Shown piece after piece: positions 26,026 to 35,495 of a DNA stretch of 64,000 nt. Under the pieces are notes generated by a model. The model saw nothing but the letters and a program-made list of their open reading frames with translations, had not been told where the DNA came from and searched no databases. Origin of the DNA: Malacoraja senta (lineage: Eukaryota); NCBI GenBank assembly GCA_038087875.1, contig CM075981.1:30814001-30878000 (forward strand), given 5' to 3'. A program made the translations under genes and the position numbers. How positions within the stretch are numbered: the first letter of the stretch is position 1; each line of letters opens with the position of its first letter.

Positions 26026-26625
26026 AATCCGTGTTCTCCAGAGATGGTACCTGACCTGCTGAGATAGTCCAGCAGTGTGTGTCCCTTCGAAAATGATTCA
26101 TAACGCAACTCCAATGTAATTATTAATATACTGATCATCGAGAATGGCGGGGGGGTGGGGGGGGCGGGGATGGTTGGATGAGATAAGGAAAAAGCGTTTC
26201 GCTTACAACAAAGTCATGGCAACAATGAAGTTGAGCGTATTCATTCCAGGTGGTCACGTCCCACCCACACTGTTCCCATTCCCATCATATTGCACAAAGA
26301 TGAAGGTATTTCTAAAGTATTTTGGAACAGTTCATAAAGTCTGTTATCAAAGCAGTCTTGCACTAGTCACTTTGGGTATGGAATATGTAATGGGTGGGAT
26401 TGAAAAAGAGGGGAAAATAAGTTGGGGGAAGAGCAGTAGAAAATGGAGGGCTTGTGAAAGGATGCTGGGAGAGACAAAGGTACCGGAGGGGAAAGGAAAT
26501 AAATAAAGAAACCCAGGAGAAAGTAGAGATACATTTATTCTACATGACCATTTGCTCTGAAGTATCAAGGCTTGGTGTGATGTGTTCTTCTATGTGTTTA
26601 TAGAAAGTTACTATAACTTCTCTGC

Positions 26626-26941
26626 TTAGTTTAGTTTAGTTTAGTGATACAGCTTGGAAACAGGCCCTTCGGCCCACCAAGTCCCCACCGACCAGCGATC
26701 ACTGCACACTAACACCACCCTACGCACACTAGGGACAATTTTATATTTATACCAAGCCAATTAACCTACAAACCTGTGCTTCTTCGGAGCATGGGAGGAA
26801 ACCGGAAATCTCAGAGAAAGCCCACGCAGGTCACGGGGAGAACGTAGAAACACAGTACAGACAGCACCTGTACTCAGGATCAAACCCGGGTCTCTGGCGC
26901 TGTAAGGCAGTAGTTCTACCTCTACGCCACGGTGCTGCCCA
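26626..26941 (-). mobile_element. HE1-type V-SINE
   Basis: Full head, V-domain and tail. Confidence 0.85.
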
Positions 26942-28028: not shown

Positions 28029-29049
28029 CTGCAAGACACAGCAACCAACCATGAATTACTGGGATGAAGTTGGCAACACAAAAAGCCTGGCAGTATTCTT
28101 TCAAACCTGCCTTTTCAAAACAGGCTTCCTTGACATAAAGCCCTTAGGCAAGTGAGGTCCATCACATTTCAGCCAGCAGATTTGATCCCTAGGAGAGTTG
28201 AGATCCTGGATTGAAAAGAAAGCTGCAACAAATCTGCAGTGATAATGTAGTTGGATATATATTGCCCCCAATGCAAGCATTAAGTAAAATGCGTTTGCTG
28301 TCCAAAGATGATTCCACATTTCAATGCTCAGAACTGTGAAATCAATGCAGTGAGTTCACCGAGTATTCCCTCCTGATTAGTGGTGGAGATCATTAAGAGG
28401 CTGCCAGAGAACAGTAATTGGGCATGGTTTTAAGAGAATAGATGAGCAAATCAATAGTATTAGATGAACTATGGTGACAAGAGGTAGCTGCAAACACTAG
28501 AGCGGACCTGCTGGGCCAAATGTCCTGTTTTAGTGCAGTAGACTGCACAAATAACTCGCACATGTAAATATTGCGTAACAGTAGCTTTTCTTTTTTTGTA
28601 ATCCTTTTGCAAGACATAATTACACAGTGGGTAATAGATTACCGGTACTGCTGGTGATTTTTGTTTTATAACCATAGGAAAAGATTTTTTGCCACGATTG
28701 AAAGAAGAATAAAAACCTCAGTTCTAAAATTTACAGCTGAGGGACATAAATGTGTTTTCAAAGATTTTGCCCAACAGACCAGTCCTTTATAATCAATGCT
28801 CTATCAATAGGATGTCAAGGATAAATCTCAGCCACTGAAATTACATTCTTGGTGCTCTGTGGCTGCACAATGATGAAGCAGGTAGTGCTGCTGTTTCACA
28901 GCACAGGTACCTTGAGCTCGACCCTGACCCCAGTTTGACCCGTGTGAAGATTAATTGATCACCCAGAATCGAGGTGCAGAGGATATAGGTTTAAGGTGAA
29001 GGGAAAAAGATTTAATAGGAATCTGAGTAGGTATGTTACAATACTTGCC

Positions 29050-29320
29050 TTCAGCGGCGCTGTAATTCTGTCACTGGCCGTGTGCGTGATTTTGGCGCCT
29101 TTAAGGGGGGGCGGGGTTAAAGCGCGGGTTTCTCCTCCCTTGTCCTGAATTATACTTTGTTGGAGTACCAGCCTCTGTGGAAGAAGCGTTCCGAGTGCCG
29201 TTTTGCGTAGTTTGTTTTAAAAATCTCCCAACAAGTTCAGCGTTGGAATCATTTAAAAATCATCTTCTGAAGCGTCAACGCCAACAACGGGGACGGATTT
29301 CACACAAGGGAAAGGTAAAC
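29050..29320 (+). promoter_or_regulatory. Putative CpG-rich transposase promoter and non-coding first exon
   Basis: CpG-rich patch with GC box GGGGCGGGG at about 29108; donor AAG|GTAAAC at 29315; T-rich acceptor AG directly before the ATG at 29853. Confidence 0.4.
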
Positions 29321-29852
29321 GAAAATGCTTTATTTTAATGTATAACCGTTCTCCTTAAGAGGCCTTTAATTCACATTTTTACATGCGACACGGTGATTTT
29401 TTCCCCCGAACTAACGGCAATAATTTTCATGCCAATACGGGGTTAAATTCACCACAAATGAACGTTCCAAATGATCGTGTTCCAGAAATCCCCATTCGCA
29501 AGATGATATAAATTCCCATTAATTTACAGGTATTAAACATTCAATTTCTTCCATTTGGCCTATAAATCCATGACAATGAGATAAAAAAATTATGTTATAT
29601 TGTGAATTCTTGTGTGAATATTATTTGGACACTTAAGCTTTTTAAAAATGTTAATATTTTCTTAAATAAATGGATAGATGTTTAAATCTAGTAATTGAAT
29701 TTAGATGAAACTGATGATTTTCTTGTTGAGTATTTACTATTTGTTTTAGCATTTAACTTTATCATTTCTACCTTTTTTTCTAAAGCTGCAAATAATAACT
29801 TGTTTCTGTTAATGATGTTCAGTGTTTTTTTTTAAATTTACATTGTAAATAG

Positions 29853-30179
29853 ATGTCTCCAAAGAAGAAATGCAAAATTGACAATCCAAAAGCCCAGACA
29901 GGCATAGCTAGAGTTCAACTTGAAGAGAAGTTCTCTGTCATGCCTGAGTCTAAGAGGGATCTTAAAAATGGACACATCTTGTACTTGTATACCTCGTTTG
30001 GAAAAAGTCTGCCTGAAACGGAGAAATCGCTGAGTTCACATTTCTCTTTGTCGGATGCAGAAGGCTATTCATTTGTTACTGTTAAGTTAAAAGTGAAGAC
30101 TCTCGTTAACCGGACTTTGCTTAAGTTTAAAAAAACTCACCAATCCCAAGGAACTTGGAGTATTTATGGAAATTTGTGA
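29853..30179 (+). CDS. N-terminal part of the transposase (out of frame with the main ORF)
   Basis: MSPKKKCK NLS-like start. Deleting one A from the A7 run at 30129-30135 fuses it to the 874-aa ORF (978 aa total). Confidence 0.65.
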   Translation: MSPKKKCKIDNPKAQTGIARVQLEEKFSVMPESKRDLKNGHILYLYTSFGKSLPETEKSLSSHFSLSDAEGYSFVTVKLKVKTLVNRTLLKFKKTHQSQGTWSIYGNL

Positions 30180-32790
30180 TGAAACTTTTAAACTTCCAGA
30201 AGGCAGTCAACACATTTCTTTAGATGACATTCCACTGCCTGGTGCTCAAGATCCTGAATCCTTGACATCTGCCGAAAGCCAAGTGCCCATATTTCAAGAC
30301 ACTGAGGACATGGGCGATGACAGTCATAGTCTGCATCCTCCACTGAATCTAGCAATGCCAACGACACCTGCTGCCTCACCTGAACCAATGCCATCGACAT
30401 CTAGTGTTTCAAAAAGATGTAGCAGAGAATTTCTAAGTCTTTCACCAGGGAAACAAAAATTGACGAAAAGACTAAAGTATATGTACGAATCCAGGGCTGC
30501 TCTTTCAACAAAGTATCACACAAAGATCAGTGAACTTAGGGCACGGTTGAAAACTCTCAAACGTATAGTTAATCAAGCCTTAAAGAGAAAGCAAAACCAA
30601 ATAGATTTAAAGGACAGAAAGATTCAGGAACTCAAAACCAAATTACGTGATAATACTTCTGCACGAGTGCTTGCTAACACCAAGGCAGAGTTTTTGAAAC
30701 TTAAAAAAGCACACAGACAATTGCTGATGTTTCGTGGCAGTACGGAAAAGAGGAAAACTGTTTCAATTCACCAGTACAGAAAAGTTCATGAAAATTTAAA
30801 GGACAGGGAAGAGGATGTGAGACGCCTCGAATTTGACAATCTTGTCCTCAAAGAAACAATCGAAAATCTGCAGGCTGCCAGTATTGTCAAGGCAAAGGTG
30901 GGCCAGAAAACCTACTCCTCAACAATAAGGATGCATGTGTTTGACTGTATTGTAAACAGAACTCCCACAGCAAACATTCCAATCCTGATAAGCCAGTTCT
31001 ACAAGCGGAGTGGACTTCATCTGGATTATGTTCCTCGACGCAGTGCAGTTGAAGTTATGGCCCGAGAATTGGGAGCTATTGCTGAGTTGCAAACAGCAGA
31101 GATGCTCCTTGCAACAAGGGGTTTGACTGTGGGGTTTGATGCAACCACCCAGGAAGAGACCCACATTAACAGTGTTCATTTCACCACCACAAACAAATGT
31201 CTCTCTGCAGCAGTTGATGAATTGGCTGGTGGGACTGCTGAGGACTATGCACAACATATTTGCGAAACAATTGACAATTTGTGTAAAACTTACATTTATT
31301 TTAATGAGCAAACAAATTTTCAAGATACAAGACAAAAGATAATCGACAACATTTCAAACACAATGAGTGACAGGTGTGCAGCTAATCATGCTGCTATAAG
31401 AATTGTGAGTAGTGAGTGGGGTAAATATTTGAACGAGCTCTACTGCCACTTGCATCCTCTTGACTCCATTGCTACATCAGTTCGCTCAGCCCAAAAAATG
31501 CAGAAACAATCCGGAGGACAATTCTTATTTGGGAAAGACTGTCTAGCAGTAAATGCCATACTGCAGATGAGCAAACTTAGATACAAAAACGGAAAAGGGG
31601 ACCCAAAAGGATTTGTCGCATTTTTAGATGACAGGAACATCCCCCGAGGTGTCCTCCCACGGTACCGTGGCAACAGATTGCACATACTGTTTCATATTAG
31701 TGGAAAGCTGATAGAATATTATGATGACTTTGTAGCACTGCTGAATAGCGGAACATCCTGTGGGGGGTTGAAAAGCGCCATCCTCCATGACTTCACCCAG
31801 GCTGAAGCAAAAGTAGAACTTCAGATATTGGGCTTACTTGGCAAATATCTGACTGGGCCTTGGATGAAACGCTTCTACACTTCAAGCCAGAATCAGATCA
31901 ACCATGTTGATGGCATCAAAGTGGTTAAAAGGGTGATTGCTGCTCTAAAGGAAGCCACAGAAAATCCAGAGAACATGATATTGGCAAGGGAAGATTTCTT
32001 CGGTGAGGAGGTACATCTTGACGCCACATTGAAAAAACTTTGGGAGCTACCAATGCATCCACAGTTCAGTTCAAAGATGAGGAGCTGTCTTCAAGCTGTC
32101 ATCACTGTGTTGGAGAGGCAATATAGTAAATACTTTGAACTTGATGTAACTGAGAAACTGAAGGAGGAGACTGCATCAGCAAGATCACACAACATTGATG
32201 CGGAGGAGATAATGGGGATATTTAGCTCATTGAAACAGAAATCTCCCAATGCCACCATGTGTTATTTGTCATGTAGGATGCGGGCCTGCAAGAATAGAAC
32301 AGTCAATTACCTTGATAATCTCGAGGAGCATCGTAGGGAGGAGGTGCTCTGTAAGGCAATGAAATTGGGGAGAGTGCAGAGGAACAGACGGAAGAAAAAA
32401 CAGAAGGAATTGAGAGCAGAAATCATCAAGCGACAGAAAGGCAAGGAGCATGCTCGGGACACGAAAGAGAGGAAAAAAATAGAAAAAAAATTGAAAGAGA
32501 CTGATTTAAACAGCATTCGCAGAGATTATCCAAATTTGGACTACTCCAAATGTGATGATCTACAGGACATACTTAATGGGAAAGTAGTGGGCAGAAAGGC
32601 ATGTCATGTGTGGTTTGAAGAGCAAAAACCTGTAGTTTACAATGCCAAAATTGAAAAGTTGAGGAAAAACAAGGTGTACAGAGTTGCTTATTGGTTGCAA
32701 TCTGACGAGTATGATGATGCTACTGATTTTGATATGCCAATGTACCAGCTAGCAGCTGATCTTCTCCTTAAAGATTTGGTCTTTTGCTAG
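30166..32790 (+). CDS. DDE transposase (RNase H fold, CxxH insertion-domain type) with N-terminal coiled coil and C-terminal Tudor/Spindlin-like domain
   Basis: 874 aa uninterrupted. GFD325ATT, MSD402R, C427HLH430 and NIDAE680 fit the D-D-CxxH-E signature of hAT/P/MULE-type transposases. Lies between the TIRs. Confidence 0.88.
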   Translation: MEICDETFKLPEGSQHISLDDIPLPGAQDPESLTSAESQVPIFQDTEDMGDDSHSLHPPLNLAMPTTPAASPEPMPSTSSVSKRCSREFLSLSPGKQKLTKRLKYMYESRAALSTKYHTKISELRARLKTLKRIVNQALKRKQNQIDLKDRKIQELKTKLRDNTSARVLANTKAEFLKLKKAHRQLLMFRGSTEKRKTVSIHQYRKVHENLKDREEDVRRLEFDNLVLKETIENLQAASIVKAKVGQKTYSSTIRMHVFDCIVNRTPTANIPILISQFYKRSGLHLDYVPRRSAVEVMARELGAIAELQTAEMLLATRGLTVGFDATTQEETHINSVHFTTTNKCLSAAVDELAGGTAEDYAQHICETIDNLCKTYIYFNEQTNFQDTRQKIIDNISNTMSDRCAANHAAIRIVSSEWGKYLNELYCHLHPLDSIATSVRSAQKMQKQSGGQFLFGKDCLAVNAILQMSKLRYKNGKGDPKGFVAFLDDRNIPRGVLPRYRGNRLHILFHISGKLIEYYDDFVALLNSGTSCGGLKSAILHDFTQAEAKVELQILGLLGKYLTGPWMKRFYTSSQNQINHVDGIKVVKRVIAALKEATENPENMILAREDFFGEEVHLDATLKKLWELPMHPQFSSKMRSCLQAVITVLERQYSKYFELDVTEKLKEETASARSHNIDAEEIMGIFSSLKQKSPNATMCYLSCRMRACKNRTVNYLDNLEEHRREEVLCKAMKLGRVQRNRRKKKQKELRAEIIKRQKGKEHARDTKERKKIEKKLKETDLNSIRRDYPNLDYSKCDDLQDILNGKVVGRKACHVWFEEQKPVVYNAKIEKLRKNKVYRVAYWLQSDEYDDATDFDMPMYQLAADLLLKDLVFC

Positions 32791-32861
32791 AAATTGTAAA
32801 TTAATTACCTATCTGTTATGGACTTACAGCATATAATACAATAATATTATATATTATAATA

Positions 32862-32956
32862 CACCGAGTGTGACTGAGGAGTGAATGAATAATGCGATGT
32901 AAAGCGCCTTGAGTATTAGAAAGGCGCTATATAAATCCCATCCATTATTATTATTA
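32862..32956 (+). mobile_element. Short L2-type LINE/SINE 3' tail inside the transposon 3' region
   Basis: tgtaaAGCGCCTT-gagtattaga-AAGGCGCTatataaat...(att)n; perfect 8-bp stem at 32903-32928. Confidence 0.7.
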
Positions 32957-33794
32957 ATATTAAAGTTCTGATCTTGTGAATATCACATTTTTGAATTTTC
33001 AAAGCAGTCTGGGTGTTTATTACTATTTCCGTCACAACGGTCAATTTTGTAATTAGCTACAATTAAGTAACTAACTAATTATATGCTGCAATTTCAGGTC
33101 ATCCAAGTAAGATTATTTTATATTTGTTTCAGAATGCTTCAATCTACAATAACTGAAAATTTCATTCAGTTCTCTTAATTTTTAAGAAAGTTATGGGCTT
33201 TTGACTGTCCTCGATCACAGCTTTTGAGACAAGTCAATGGAAAGGCAATAGGGAACAAGATGCTAATTTCCGAGTATGAAAATGGCCATAACATTTTTAA
33301 TACTGAAGATATGAAAGTGAATTAGGTGTCAAATTAAACTTCTTGTAATGCTTTATCTGATGGGATAAATTACAGACTTGATTTTTAAAATCTCAAAATT
33401 TTGTAACATTGCTAATCTGAGGGGCATCTTTCTCACACAAAGGGTGGTGGGTATATGGAACAAGCTGCCAGAGGAGGTAGTTGTGGCAGGGACTATCCCA
33501 ACGTTTAAGAAACAGTTGGACAGGTACATGGAGAGGAAAGTTTTGGAGGGATATGGACCAAACGCAGGCAGGTGGGACTACTGTAGCTGGGACATGTTGG
33601 GCCAAAGGGCCTGTTTCCACACTCTATGACTATAATTGATTTAAAAATACAGAATGGAAATAGGCCCTTCGGCCTACAGAGTCCACACCGACCATTGATC
33701 ACCAGTTCACATTCGTTCGATGTTGTCCCACTTTTTCATCCACTACCTGCACACTCAGGGCAATTTACAGGTCAATTAACCTGCAACTCTGCAC

Positions 33795-35495
33795 ATAGAA
33801 ACATAGAAACATAGAAAATAGGTGCAGGAGTAGGCCATTCGGCCCTTCGAGCCTGCACCGCCATTCAATGTGATCATGGCTGATCATCCAACTCAGTATC
33901 CTGTACCTGCCTTCTCTCCATACCCCCTGATCCCCTTAGCCACAAGGGCCACATCTAACTCCCTCTTAAATATAGCCAATGAACTGGCCTCAACTACTTT
34001 CTGTGGCAGAGAATTCCACAGATTCACCACTCTCTGTGTGAAAAAAAAAAAATCTCATCTCGGTCGTAAAAGACTTCCCCCTTATCCTTAAACTGAGAAC
34101 CCTTGTTCTGGACTTCCCCAACATCGGGAACAATCTTCTTGCATCTAGCCTGTCCAACCCTTTAAGAATTTTGTAAGTTTCTATAAGATCCCCCCTCAAT
34201 CTTCTAAATTCTAGCGAGTACAAGCCGAGTCTATCCAGTCTTTCTTCATATGCGAGTCCTGCCCTCCCAGGAATCAGTCTGGTGAACCTTCTCTGTACTC
34301 CCTCTATGGCAAGAATAATAATAATAATAATAATGGATTTTATTTACGGGCGCCTTATACCGAGGTCTCAAGGACACCATACAGAGATTTATAGAAAACA
34401 TATAATCAGAATTTTAAAAAAAATAGGTTATAAAGACCAATACATAAATCAGGGACAGAATTCCTTCCAAAAACACAAAAAAAAGAAAATCAGAAGCACA
34501 ATTTGAGGAGAGAGCAGCGGCAATTTAACGCCAGCGTCCACTCTCCCCTCCGACCGCCATCTTGAACACAGACTAACAAATACAATTACAAACAATTACA
34601 TACAAAAATCATCCCCCCACAATGATTTCCACTGTGGGGAAGGCACAATGTCCAGTCCCCAGCCCCAGTTCACCCAAAAAAGTCAGGCCAAATGAAGCCC
34701 CCGCTATTGCCTCTACGGAGGCCCGATGATCCTGGCCGTTCTCGCCGGGTGATGTAGCCCCGGCGTCGGGAGAGTCCTCCAGCAGCTGGGCCACCTGGAA
34801 CGGCCGCATTCCTCACCGGAGGCCGCAACTACGGCTGGAACGGCCGATTTCCCGCAGGCGTCCGCAGCACCTGAAGCCGACAAGGCCGCGCCGACTTGGA
34901 GCTCAAGGCTCCAGATGTTGGAGTCGGCGCCGCCGCCCGCGAATGGTCGCTCCAGTCCCGGAGGTGTTGAGCTCGGCGGTCCAGCTCACCGGAGCTCCAG
35001 CGCGTCGGTCCAGCGCGGCGACCCAGGCAAGGCATCGCCCGCTCCGCTGCACAATAGCGCTCCAGCGCCGTGCCGCCACCGAAGCTGAGGGTGCTGTGCG
35101 GTTCCCGCCAGGAATCGCCGCTCCACGCCCGCTGGTAGGCCGCGAGGACGGGTCGAATGGGCAGCCGGAGAGAAGGCTGCCTCACCGACCAGGTAGGGAC
35201 CAGGAAGTGGTTTCCCCTTGATCCCCCCACATTAAAGGCAAAATAAATAAAAACAAAGACTTAAAGAAAAATAAAAAAACTTAGTAAAAAAGTGCAATTA
35301 ACGGACGGCTGCTGTTTTGCAGCCGTTCCTCAAGATGGCTCCTCCCATGAGTTTGTCTTTCCTCAGATTAGGAGACCAAAACTGTACGCAATACTCCAGG
35401 TGTGGTCTTACCAAGGCCCTGTACAACTGCAGTAGAACCTCCCTGCTCCTATACTCAAATTATTTTGCTATGAATGCTAACATACCATTCGCTTT
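33795..35495 (-). mobile_element. CR1 fragment (33795-34313 and 35352-35495) split by a GC-rich retroposon
   Basis: YSLEFRRLRGDLIETYKILKGLDRLDA; the sequence resumes at tgtctttcctcagattaggagacc. Confidence 0.85.
34314..35350 (-). mobile_element. GC-rich ORF-less retroposon with an L2-type tail
   Basis: GCCATCTT near the 5' end, CpG-rich body, hairpin CCCCACAGTG-GAAAT-CATTGTGGGG, tail gtgtccttgag...aaggcgcc..taaataaaat(att)n. Confidence 0.65.

What the first reader, a model, noticed from the sequence alone, without database searches (positions are those of the whole stretch)
32584..32790. DDE transposase ending in a Spindlin-like Tudor domain: candidate chromatin-reading transposon
Seen: after the catalytic E680 and a basic helical linker, the last 68 aa read VVGRKACHVWFEEQKPVVYNAKIEKLRKNKVYRVAYW...MYQLAADLLLKDLV. 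Established (recalled from memory, not searched): Spin/Ssty Tudor repeats of Spindlin follow roughly IGKAVEHMF...WRGMVL...FYITY...YMYQLLDDYKEGDL and bind methylated histone H3 through an aromatic cage. The G-x-x-x-x-H-x-aromatic start, the Y-x-V-x-Y strand and the MYQLxxDxxxxDL end all line up. Aromatic residues W816, Y825 and Y842 sit near the expected cage positions. Inference: this hAT-related transposase may read a histone mark to choose targets or evade silencing, as chromoviral integrases do with chromodomains. It could also point to an evolutionary link between such transposons and Spindlins. I do not know of this fusion as a characterised system, but cannot exclude that it is annotated.
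Basis: partly seen in the sequence, partly recalled or inferred. Interest (0 to 1): 0.88.

Follow-up and report, generated by a model that had tools for sequence, protein, structure and literature searches.

The report
Transposase ending in Spindlin-like Tudor domain
A cut-and-paste DNA transposon found across animals encodes an enzyme whose tail is a small, highly conserved domain that looks like the histone-mark reader of Spindlin proteins, which suggests, without proving, that this mobile element reads chromatin marks.

Summary
Window 32584-32790 encodes the last 68 residues of an 874-aa ORF in a 4.4-kb transposon (TIRs at 29028 and 33414, 7-bp target duplication).

- **Enzyme core.** Residues 284-717 superpose on the Hermes hAT transposase (Z 18.3). 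D325, D402 and E680 are invariant or nearly so across the family.
- **C-terminal domain.** Residues 786-874 lie beyond the Hermes-like core. They fold with pLDDT 92 into four core strands, a helix and one extra strand.
- **Profile match.** A 107-sequence profile of this domain hits only Spindlin-1/2B/3/4 among all PDB sequences (E 4.6e-4 to 0.018; next hit 0.59).
- **Fold match.** Fold searches put Spindlins first or tied with the RDM15 Tudor.
- **Cage residues.** W816, Y825 and Y842 align with Spindlin-1 cage residues and are 99-100% aromatic in 110 homologues.
- **Distribution.** The domain is present in 127 of 146 family members that reach it, from cnidarians to fish.

Methyl-histone binding and chromatin-guided targeting remain inference. 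I found no paper describing this fusion. A 2025 paper calls a Gypsy element the first TE known to carry a Tudor domain. First readers noted the same idea on three other pieces of this genome. I rate it a new variant of a known kind.

The parts
29021..29027 (.). left copy of the target-site duplication, ATCTGAG
   Evidence: Identical 7-mer at 33415-33421. Paralogous copies of the host repeat run straight on from 29027 into sequence like that after 33421 (loose ends and joints).
29028..29041 (+). left terminal inverted repeat, TAGGTATGTTACAA
   Evidence: The pattern has only two matches in the 64-kb window, in inverted orientation; 0.13 expected by chance.
29853..30134 (+). coding sequence for the family's N-terminal ~92 residues, in frame +3
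   Evidence: tblastn with homologue P0001 residues 2-91: 53% identity, E 6e-22. The family consensus begins with the same motif.
30129..30135 (+). A7 run carrying the single frameshift that separates the N-terminal part from the main ORF
   Evidence: Frames +3 and +1 both match P0001 on either side of this run (sequence). In other copies one A is left out here: about half of the depth in X1, X3 and X19, and all of it in X18.
30166..32790 (+). main ORF, 874 aa (homology in this frame starts at 30121), transposase with C-terminal Tudor domain
   Evidence: It has 133 homologues among the scored candidates and 1806 cluster representatives at E<=1e-3.
30445..30882 (+). long N-terminal helices (residues 94-239), coiled-coil-like
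   Evidence: AlphaFold2 model elements H94-162, H164-192 and H201-239. Profile hits here are only coiled-coil proteins.
31015..32316 (+). hAT-like catalytic core with all-alpha insertion domain (residues 284-717). D325 at 31138-31140, D402 at 31369-31371, C427/H430 at 31444-31455, E680 at 32203-32205
   Evidence: VIA-align to Hermes: Z 18.3, 341 residues aligned, model 284-717 against Hermes 136-609. Foldseek gives Hermes E 1.4e-7 and P element transposase E 1.1e-5. E680, C427 and H430 are invariant; D325 and D402 are nearly invariant.
32326..32520 (+). basic helical linker (residues 721-785, net charge +15)
   Evidence: Model helix H721-778; charge computed. It lies beyond the end of the Hermes alignment.
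32521..32787 (+). C-terminal Spin/Ssty-like Tudor domain (residues 786-874; barrel 805-874 = 32578-32787). Candidate cage W816, Y825, Y842 and F855, with D854 beside it
   Evidence: pLDDT 92 model. Profile against PDB hits only Spindlins, E 4.6e-4. Fold searches. Residue conservation.
33401..33414 (-). right terminal inverted repeat, TAGCAATGTTACAA on the minus strand
   Evidence: Contigs of other copies diverge into unrelated sequence after 33414 (loose ends in X19).
33415..33421 (.). right copy of the target-site duplication, ATCTGAG

Best explanation
The region is the 3' end of the transposase gene of a near-intact, 4.4-kb hAT-like cut-and-paste DNA transposon. The enzyme has a Hermes-type RNase-H-fold DDE core (shown by fold and by invariant residues). 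After the point where Hermes ends, it continues with a ~60-residue strongly basic helix and a single Tudor domain whose nearest known relatives are the Spin/Ssty repeats of Spindlins (shown by profile and fold). The domain keeps aromatic residues at the positions that cage methyl-lysine or methyl-arginine in Spindlin-1, and it is acidic, as a binder of basic histone tails should be (shown). The inferred mechanism is that the Tudor docks on a methylated histone tail. That would tether the transposase, or the excised-transposon complex, to a particular chromatin state and bias where the element lands. This is analogous to the chromodomain of chromoviral integrases. Which mark is read, and whether targeting is the purpose, are not known.
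For: Mobile element: 14-bp TIRs unique in the window, a 7-bp duplication, empty-site-like paralogues of the host repeat, and many copies in sequencing runs. Enzyme: Hermes Z 18.3 over 341 residues, Foldseek E 1.4e-7, and D325, D402, E680, C427 and H430 invariant or nearly so. Domain: pLDDT 92, with four core strands, a helix and one extra strand. This matches the published description of a Spin/Ssty repeat (PMC3967050). Profile A3 against all PDB sequences gives 17 hits at E<=0.018, all Spindlins, and the next hit is at 0.59. In VIA-align's re-alignment of Foldseek's ranked PDB chains the top 24 entries are all Spindlins, Z 6.8-8.1, aligned to SPIN1 123-193, which is the H3K4me3-binding repeat 2. 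The Swiss-Prot AlphaFold top 13 are all Spin/Ssty proteins. Cage: the HMM alignments put W816, Y825 and Y842 on SPIN1 W62/F141, W72/W151 and Y91/Y170. In 110 homologues these positions are 99%, 99% and 100% aromatic, F855 is 90% Y/F, and D854 is 95% D/E. SPIN1's third repeat keeps the fold without a cage (PMC11499256), so the fold alone does not require these residues. Charge: the family barrel has median pI 5.0 and mean net charge -3.5. Retention: 127 of 146 members that reach the core's end have the domain, and most of the others are truncated gene models.
Against: No binding or insertion-site data exist. No family member reaches Pfam's Spin-Ssty gathering score: one of 59 hits it at E 0.13, and five each hit PTM_DIR17_Tudor and BAHCC1-like_Tudor at about 1e-3, all below threshold. 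A search that does not depend on Foldseek ranks the RDM15 Tudor (Z 6.8) just above Spindlin-4 (Z 6.5), and all Z values are in the range the tool calls middling for small domains. The fourth cage position lies outside the HMM alignment and I could not inspect model coordinates, so cage geometry is unverified. There is one repeat here, whereas Spindlin's pockets sit in an integrated three-repeat body; pocket 1 borrows F251 from repeat 3. SH3-like barrels in other transposases and integrases bind DNA or protein.
Confidence: 0.55

Rival explanations
1. The domain is a Spin/Ssty-like Tudor used for protein-protein contacts rather than for reading methyl marks. It might assemble transposase oligomers by packing repeats from different subunits as Spindlin packs its three repeats. 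Or it might bind a host partner through beta-strand addition, as SPIN1 repeat 3 binds SPOCD1 or SPIN-DOC.
For: SPIN1 repeat 3 has no cage and mediates protein interactions (PMC11499256). Spindlin repeats form an integrated body, and one pocket uses a residue from another repeat (PMC3967050). The solved Hermes entries matched include dimer and DNA-end complexes.
Against: The cage-equivalent aromatic residues are 90-100% conserved across phyla, which a pure packing role does not require. The best structural alignment is to the mark-binding repeat 2, SPIN1 123-193.
Confidence: 0.2
2. The domain reads the same chromatin signature as host Spindlin, or a methyl-arginine mark. It would then serve counter-defence or self-recognition rather than target choice. 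It could compete with a host reader that flags young elements for silencing, or bring the transposase back to marked donor copies.
For: Host SPIN1 binds H3K4me3-K9me3 on young LINE1 copies and is needed for piRNA-directed methylation (PMC11499256). Sequence-level similarity of the transposon domain to Spindlins is significant. Spindlin repeat 1 binds methyl-arginine.
Against: This is purely analogical. The SPIN1-SPOCD1 link is reported to have arisen early in tetrapod evolution, whereas the transposon family is metazoan-wide. No expression or silencing data exist.
Confidence: 0.1
3. The barrel is a nucleic-acid-binding SH3-like domain, as in the C-terminal domain of retroviral integrases or the N-terminal barrel of Tn7 TnsB. 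It would help to hold transposon ends or target DNA.
For: VIA-align lists TnsB residues 1-57 (Z 6.5, 4.8) and the TraI translocation domain (Z 6.3) among the matches. The preceding linker is very basic.
Against: The barrel itself is acidic in most members, with median pI 5.0. The profile search finds only Spindlins and no integrase or transposase barrel. The top structural neighbours are three methyl-lysine readers: Spindlin, RDM15 and BAHCC1.
Confidence: 0.1
4. The likeness to Spindlin is convergence of a generic small beta-barrel, so the domain tells nothing specific.
For: The Z scores of 6.5-8.1 are in the range that unrelated small domains can reach (notes). Pfam thresholds are not met.
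Against: Independent lines agree. Sequence-only profile hits are restricted to Spindlins, with a thousand-fold E-value gap to the next hit. The G-x-x-[IV]-x-H-x-[WF] motif is shared and in register. Language-model neighbours are Spin-Ssty and PTM/DIR17 Tudor clusters.
Confidence: 0.05

Closest known systems
Spindlin-1 to -4 and Ssty, Spin/Ssty repeats (Pfam PF02513), especially SPIN1 repeat 2 (residues ~123-193)
   Same: Four core strands plus one extra strand. The G-x-x-[IV]-x-H-x-[WF] start is shared, and aromatic residues sit at the aligned cage positions. The surface is acidic. These are the best sequence-profile hits (E 4.6e-4) and the best or tied-best structural hits.
   Different: One repeat instead of three. 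About 15-18% identity. The beta3-beta4 loop appears longer and acidic by my own reading of the sequences. Below the Pfam threshold. Attached to a transposase rather than free-standing. Ligand unknown.
RDM15 Tudor domain (PDB 7de9, H3K4me1 reader) and BAHCC1 tandem Tudor (8ye8, H4K20me1 reader); Pfam PTM_DIR17_Tudor and BAHCC1-like_Tudor
   Same: Single Tudor barrels with Z 6.8 and 6.0-6.6. Five of 59 family members give sub-threshold Pfam hits to each family.
   Different: Neither protein is hit by the family profile at E<=10 in the PDB sequence search. The alignments are shorter (57-62 residues against 63-68 for Spindlins).
Hermes transposase (hAT superfamily; PDB 6dwz, 4d1q, 2bw3)
   Same: RNase-H-like core interrupted by an all-alpha insertion domain, with 341 residues superposed at Z 18.3. 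There is a conserved D, D, E set plus C-x-x-H. The element has short TIRs beginning TAG.
   Different: No sequence-level match and no Pfam hAT dimerisation or BED domain. The N-terminus is a long coiled coil. There are ~155 extra C-terminal residues. The target duplication reads as 7 bp rather than 8.
Chromoviral (Gypsy) integrases with a C-terminal chromodomain, e.g. MAGGY
   Same: A DDE integration enzyme carrying a C-terminal royal-family methyl-lysine reader. The chromodomain is reported to direct integration to H3K9me chromatin (Gao et al. 2008, as cited in 10.1101/2021.11.30.470311).
   Different: Function there is tested; here it is not.
Gypsy-10_Ec32 of Ectocarpus (C-terminal Tudor) and hAT-Chromo fusions in the sponge Ephydatia
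   Same: These are the other reported cases of a Tudor on a TE (PMC12477816) and of a reader domain on a hAT transposase (10.1101/2021.11.30.470311).
   Different: The first is an LTR retrotransposon of brown algae. The second uses chromodomains and is restricted to one or a few species. The present fusion is ancestral to a family spread across animal phyla.

Membership tests
Spin/Ssty (Pfam PF02513) | Score above Pfam's gathering threshold | tested here: not met
   The window protein has no hit at E<=10. One of 59 family domains hits Spin-Ssty, at E 0.13.
Spin/Ssty (Pfam PF02513) | Detectable sequence homology to Spindlin repeats | tested here: met
   The 107-sequence profile hits 17 distinct PDB sequences at E 4.6e-4 to 0.018. 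All are Spindlin-1/2B/3/4, with repeats 1 and 2 both aligned. The next hit is at E 0.59.
Spin/Ssty (Pfam PF02513) | Repeat fold of four core beta strands plus one extra strand (PMC3967050) | tested here: met
   The model has E26-33, E36-48, E52-59, E68-73, then H74-82 and E86-88, at pLDDT 92. Published definition.
Spin/Ssty (Pfam PF02513) | Three tandem repeats forming one integrated globule | tested here: not met
   There is a single barrel at the C-terminus, and nothing similar elsewhere in the 874-aa model.
Spin/Ssty (Pfam PF02513) | Aromatic cage (SPIN1 F141, W151, Y170, Y177 or W62, W72, Y91, Y98) | tested here: inconclusive
   Three positions align and are 99-100% aromatic in 110 homologues. 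The fourth (candidate F855, 90% Y/F) lies outside the alignment, and model coordinates could not be inspected.
Spin/Ssty (Pfam PF02513) | Binding of methylated histone peptides | not testable with these tools
   Needs a peptide array, ITC or a complex structure.
Tudor 'royal family' fold | SH3-like beta barrel superposable on solved Tudor domains | tested here: met
   Spindlins give Z 6.8-8.1, RDM15 6.8, BAHCC1 6.0-6.6, and SMN, SETDB1, PHF20 and TDRD3 4.4-5.1. Sub-threshold Pfam hits to members are mostly from Tudor-type families.
hAT transposon superfamily | RNase-H-like DDE core with all-alpha insertion domain like Hermes | tested here: met
   Z 18.3, 341 residues, rmsd 3.4. The next non-Hermes entries score Z<=10.6. 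Foldseek E 1.4e-7.
hAT transposon superfamily | Conserved D, D, E and C-x-x-H residues | tested here: met
   E680, C427 and H430 are invariant, and D325 and D402 nearly invariant, in 47 full-length homologues. Equivalence to the Hermes catalytic residues is inferred from alignment offsets, not shown residue by residue.
hAT transposon superfamily | Pfam hAT C-terminal dimerisation domain and BED-type zinc finger | tested here: not met
   No such hit in the window protein or in any of 47 homologues. The profile against PDB sequences finds only coiled coils.
hAT transposon superfamily | 8-bp target-site duplication | tested here: inconclusive
   This copy shows ATCTGAG, 7 bp, when the TIRs are taken as symmetric. 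An 8-bp reading (AATCTGAG) is possible only if the right TIR is one base shorter. One copy only.
hAT transposon superfamily | Short terminal inverted repeats | tested here: met
   14-bp TIRs with 12 of 14 bases matching, unique in the window.
Reader-guided integration systems (works like, not membership) | Insertion sites biased towards the chromatin mark that the fused reader binds | not testable with these tools
   Needs insertion-site maps set against chromatin maps, or transposition assays.

The most novel reading that the evidence does not exclude
The transposon Tudor and the Spin/Ssty repeats of Spindlins share ancestry through exchange between host and element. Either Spindlins arose by triplication of a domesticated transposase tail, or an early animal transposon captured a Spindlin-type repeat. 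In this reading the element reads the same H3K4me3-type signature that host SPIN1 uses to flag young transposons, which would make this a molecular arms-race pair. A wider form of the idea is that the same module has been captured repeatedly by unrelated transposase superfamilies. AlphaFold DB lists it at the C-terminus of proteins auto-named THAP9-like, Mutator-like and YqaJ-domain in annelid and mollusc entries.
Probability: 0.15. Interest if true: 0.9.

Novelty: new variant of a known kind. Interest (0 to 1): 0.72.

Why it matters
Chromatin-reader domains are well documented on retrotransposon integrases, where they steer integration. For cut-and-paste DNA transposons the examples I found are few and species-restricted. 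The papers I could search describe no Tudor-bearing transposase.

It is an ancestral, strongly conserved part of a transposase family present from cnidarians to vertebrates, and cage-like residues are retained. If it binds a histone mark, three things would follow:
- It would show that DNA transposons also use chromatin marks to choose where to act.
- It would give a compact natural module for biasing transposase-based gene delivery.
- It would open a testable link to Spindlins, which in mammals mark young transposons for silencing.

The claim can be tested directly with a ~90-residue recombinant domain.

Tried and rejected
- **Single-sequence searches of the tail** found nothing useful. Pfam gave only DUF5734 at E 0.07 and PDB gave oligopeptidase B at E 0.39. 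Only family profiles worked.
- **The full-length family profile against PDB sequences** was swamped by coiled-coil noise and did not find Hermes. hAT likeness therefore rests on fold only.
- **Pfam on 47 full-length homologues** gave no transposase family.
- **A generic inverted-repeat scan of 26-37 kb** missed the short TIRs.
- **TIRs and TSDs in relatives could not be checked.** Three ENA contigs returned no DNA. Of the two loci that did (L001, L002), L001 showed no clear TIRs and neither locus holds the window's TIR motif.
- **A synonymous versus non-synonymous count** on 24 well-supported differences between this copy and other copies gave 6 against 18. That fits neutral decay of this copy and says nothing about selection on the domain, so I dropped it.
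The literature search found only RepeatMasker labels.
- **A further database search restricted to the Tudor region** was considered and not run. Distant relatives rarely share exact 5-residue words, so it would mostly return the same family.
Full report
**1. What is at the coordinates**

It gives residues V807 to C874 of an 874-aa ORF (30166-32790, + strand), with a TAG stop at 32788-32790.

The ORF is not quite the whole gene. A tblastn with the closest homologue (P0001, 960 aa, 65% identical) shows that the family's first ~92 residues are encoded upstream in frame +3 (29853-30134). The remainder runs in frame +1 from 30121. The two frames meet in an A7 run at 30129-30135. When contigs of public runs are laid on the region, one A is left out there in about half of the depth in three runs and in all of it in a fourth. 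So this copy carries one extra base, and copies with the open frame exist.

**2. It is a transposon**

The ends read TAGGTATGTTACAA at 29028-29041 and its near-complement at 33401-33414. The degenerate pattern has only these two matches in 64 kb, in inverted orientation (0.13 expected by chance). Both ends are flanked by ATCTGAG, at 29021-29027 and 33415-33421.

The element sits inside an interspersed repeat. Other copies of that repeat continue from 29027 straight into sequence like that after 33421 (loose ends and joints). By my own translation of the flanks, the repeat's reading frame is continuous once the element and one copy of the duplication are removed.

Word depth over the ORF is hundreds of times that of the unique flank, and the last ~900 bp and first ~750 bp are far deeper still. 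Joints such as 29697 to 33043 point to many internally deleted derivatives. An 8-bp reading is possible only with asymmetric ends.

**3. The enzyme**

Neither the window protein nor any of 47 full-length homologues matches a Pfam transposase family. A family profile finds only coiled coils among PDB sequences.

The AlphaFold2 model built on 47 homologues is confident in the core (mean pLDDT 81, mostly above 90 from residue 250). Foldseek's best PDB matches are the Hermes hAT transposase (E 1.4e-7) and the P element transposase (1.1e-5). VIA-align superposes 341 residues, model 284-717 on Hermes 136-609, at Z 18.3. The next non-Hermes entries reach only 10.6.

E680, C427 and H430 are invariant, and D325 and D402 nearly so, across the family. 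The alignment offset at the C-terminal end places E680 at Hermes residue 572. From memory that is the Hermes catalytic glutamate, and I did not check it.

'hAT-related DDE transposase' is therefore supported by fold and conserved residues, not by sequence. The protein lacks a BED finger and the Pfam hAT dimerisation domain, and it has a long N-terminal coiled coil instead.

**4. The C-terminal domain**

The Hermes alignment ends at residue ~718, so residues 721-874 are an addition to the core. Residues 721-785 form a long helix with net charge +15.

Residues 786-874, folded alone with a 59-sequence alignment, give pLDDT 92. The elements are one helix, four strands, a helix and a short last strand. 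The same elements appear in the full-length model. [quoted passage not shown]

Sequence evidence:
- A profile of 59 family domains against all PDB sequences returned Spindlins as 17 of 20 hits, best E 0.021.
- A deeper profile of 107 domains returned 17 hits at E 4.6e-4 to 0.018. All are Spindlin-1, -2B, -3 or -4, with both repeat 1 and repeat 2 aligned. Nothing else scored below E 0.59.
- RDM15 and BAHCC1, which have solved structures and so should be in that sequence set, were not hit.

Fold evidence:
- Foldseek against the PDB lists Spindlin entries at most of the top 50 places, with probability about 1 and TM by query 0.5-0.58.
- In VIA-align's re-alignment of Foldseek's ranked PDB chains the top 24 entries are all Spindlins (Z 6.8-8.1, 63-68 residues). 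They align to SPIN1 123-193, the H3K4me3-binding repeat 2. RDM15 Tudor (6.8) and BAHCC1 (6.6) follow.
- In Swiss-Prot AlphaFold models the top 13 are Ssty1 and Spindlins.
- A search independent of Foldseek ranks RDM15 (6.8) just above Spindlin-4 (6.5).

By structure alone the safe statement is 'Tudor barrel closest to methyl-lysine readers'. The Spindlin-specific call rests on the sequence profile. Pfam thresholds are not met: sub-threshold hits go to PTM_DIR17_Tudor (5 members), BAHCC1-like_Tudor (5), Agenet (3), SMN_Tudor (1) and Spin-Ssty (1). Language-model neighbours are PTM/DIR17 Tudor and Spin-Ssty clusters (a lead only).

**5. The cage**

The HMM alignments place the family's H-x-W on SPIN1's H-G-W62 and H-M-F141. 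They place the Y before N/S-G on W72 and W151, and the Y ending the third strand on Y91 and Y170. The numbering was checked against chain 4mzg_B at an offset of 40. PMC3967050 names F141, W151, Y170 and Y177, and W62, W72, Y91 and Y98, as the two pockets.

Conservation in 110 family domains:

| Position | Conservation |
|---|---|
| W816 | W in 108, 99% aromatic |
| Y825 | 99% aromatic |
| Y842 | Y in 109, F in 1 |
| W843 | 98% aromatic |
| F855 | Y or F in 90% |
| D854 | D or E in 95% |
| H814 | H in 107 |
| D865 | D in all 110 |

SPIN1's third repeat keeps the fold without a cage (PMC11499256). The conservation here is therefore not explained by folding alone.

The barrel is acidic in most members, with median pI 5.0. 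Spindlin's histone-binding surface is also acidic.

**6. How general it is**

The family has 1806 cluster representatives at E<=1e-3. Named members come from a sponge, Hydra, molluscs, annelids, a brachiopod, a priapulid, a sea spider, echinoderms and teleosts.

Of 146 members that reach the end of the core, 127 have the domain. Most of the rest are gene models cut within 30 residues, and one has a divergent version. The domain is thus an old and retained part of this transposase.

AlphaFold DB clusters also show a similar C-terminal domain on entries auto-named THAP9-like, Mutator-like transposase and YqaJ recombinase domain proteins. I could not follow this up.

**7. Mechanism and rivals**

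- **Shown:** a mobile element, a Hermes-like core, an added basic helix, and a Tudor barrel with Spindlin-like sequence and conserved cage-position aromatics.
- **Inferred:** the barrel binds a methylated histone tail and tethers the transposase to a chromatin state, biasing target choice, as chromodomains do for chromoviral integrases.
- **Rivals:** a protein-protein or oligomerisation role like SPIN1 repeat 3; interference with, or mimicry of, host Spindlin-based recognition of young elements; or DNA binding like other SH3-type barrels in recombinases, which the acidic charge disfavours.

**8. Novelty**

Searches combining Spindlin, Tudor, transposase and hAT found no description of this fusion.
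- PMC12477816 (2025) states that a Gypsy element with a Tudor is, to its authors' knowledge, the first TE reported to carry one.
- The Grau-Bove et al. preprint reports reader capture by TEs, including hAT-Chromo fusions restricted to a sponge.

The library does not include Repbase reports or most subscription journals, so prior annotation cannot be excluded. First readers of this scan noted the same idea on three other pieces of this genome (s1-210357, s1-187583, s1-195543). I did not examine those copies.

**Verdict:** The domain identity is supported by every computational test named, and the function is still inference. This is a new variant of the known theme of reader-bearing transposable elements.

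Noticed in passing
window 30129-30135: The only break in the ~965-aa reading frame is one extra A in an A7 run. Other copies in public runs have A6 here: about half of the depth in X1, X3 and X19, and all of it in X18. It could be a real mutation of this copy or a homopolymer assembly error.
   Followed up: partly
window 29448-29771 and 32526-33414: Word depth at the two ends of the element is 50 to 1000 times that of the middle of the ORF. Joints such as 29697 to 33043 and 29748 to 32955 skip the interior. This suggests very abundant internally deleted (MITE-like) derivatives. Their 3' part still contains the DNA that encodes the Tudor domain (32526-32849 is about 40-150 times deeper than 31000-32300).
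   Followed up: partly
window 29028-33414: 31-mers of this element are held by runs labelled as nine different coded organisms. Two runs of one organism hold about 70% of the words. Runs labelled as seven other organisms hold about 33-36%, which corresponds to roughly 97% identity. This points to either slowly evolving close relatives or horizontal spread. The organisms are coded, so I could not tell which.
   Followed up: no
window 29804-32831 (run X19): Contigs from a library labelled RNA cover almost the whole ORF at even depth (~165-205) with about 5% differences. Their indels in 31283-31401 sum to a multiple of three. A related copy may be transcribed in that organism, but DNA carry-over is not excluded.
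   Followed up: no
AlphaFold DB clusters: A similar C-terminal barrel (TM by query 0.5-0.8, 19-28% identity) sits at the end of entries auto-named THAP9-like HTH protein (T1FBE8), Mutator-like transposase (A0A6J8BGA8) and YqaJ recombinase domain proteins (A0A8B6HHS2, A0A6J8DEG9, A0A8B6H1V2). This may mean repeated capture of the module by different mobile-element proteins.
   Followed up: no
window 28962-29027 and 33422-33650: The element is inserted in an interspersed, LINE-like repeat of very high copy number. By my own translation, the repeat's open frame reads through the empty site. A further piece of a similar repeat lies at 33990-34223 on the minus strand, and a 65-nt inverted match lies at 26621-26685 / 33589-33653.
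   Followed up: partly
window 30445-30882 (residues 94-239) and 29853-30134: The transposase has no BED or THAP zinc finger. Instead it has a ~92-residue conserved N-terminal segment without any Pfam match, a disordered stretch, and about 145 residues of long helices. How it recognises its ends is unknown.
   Followed up: no
window 30166-32790: At 18 of 24 well-supported sites where this copy differs from most other copies, the change alters the amino acid. One is Q443, where the family has a nearly invariant L. This copy is decaying, not autonomous in the strict sense.
   Followed up: partly
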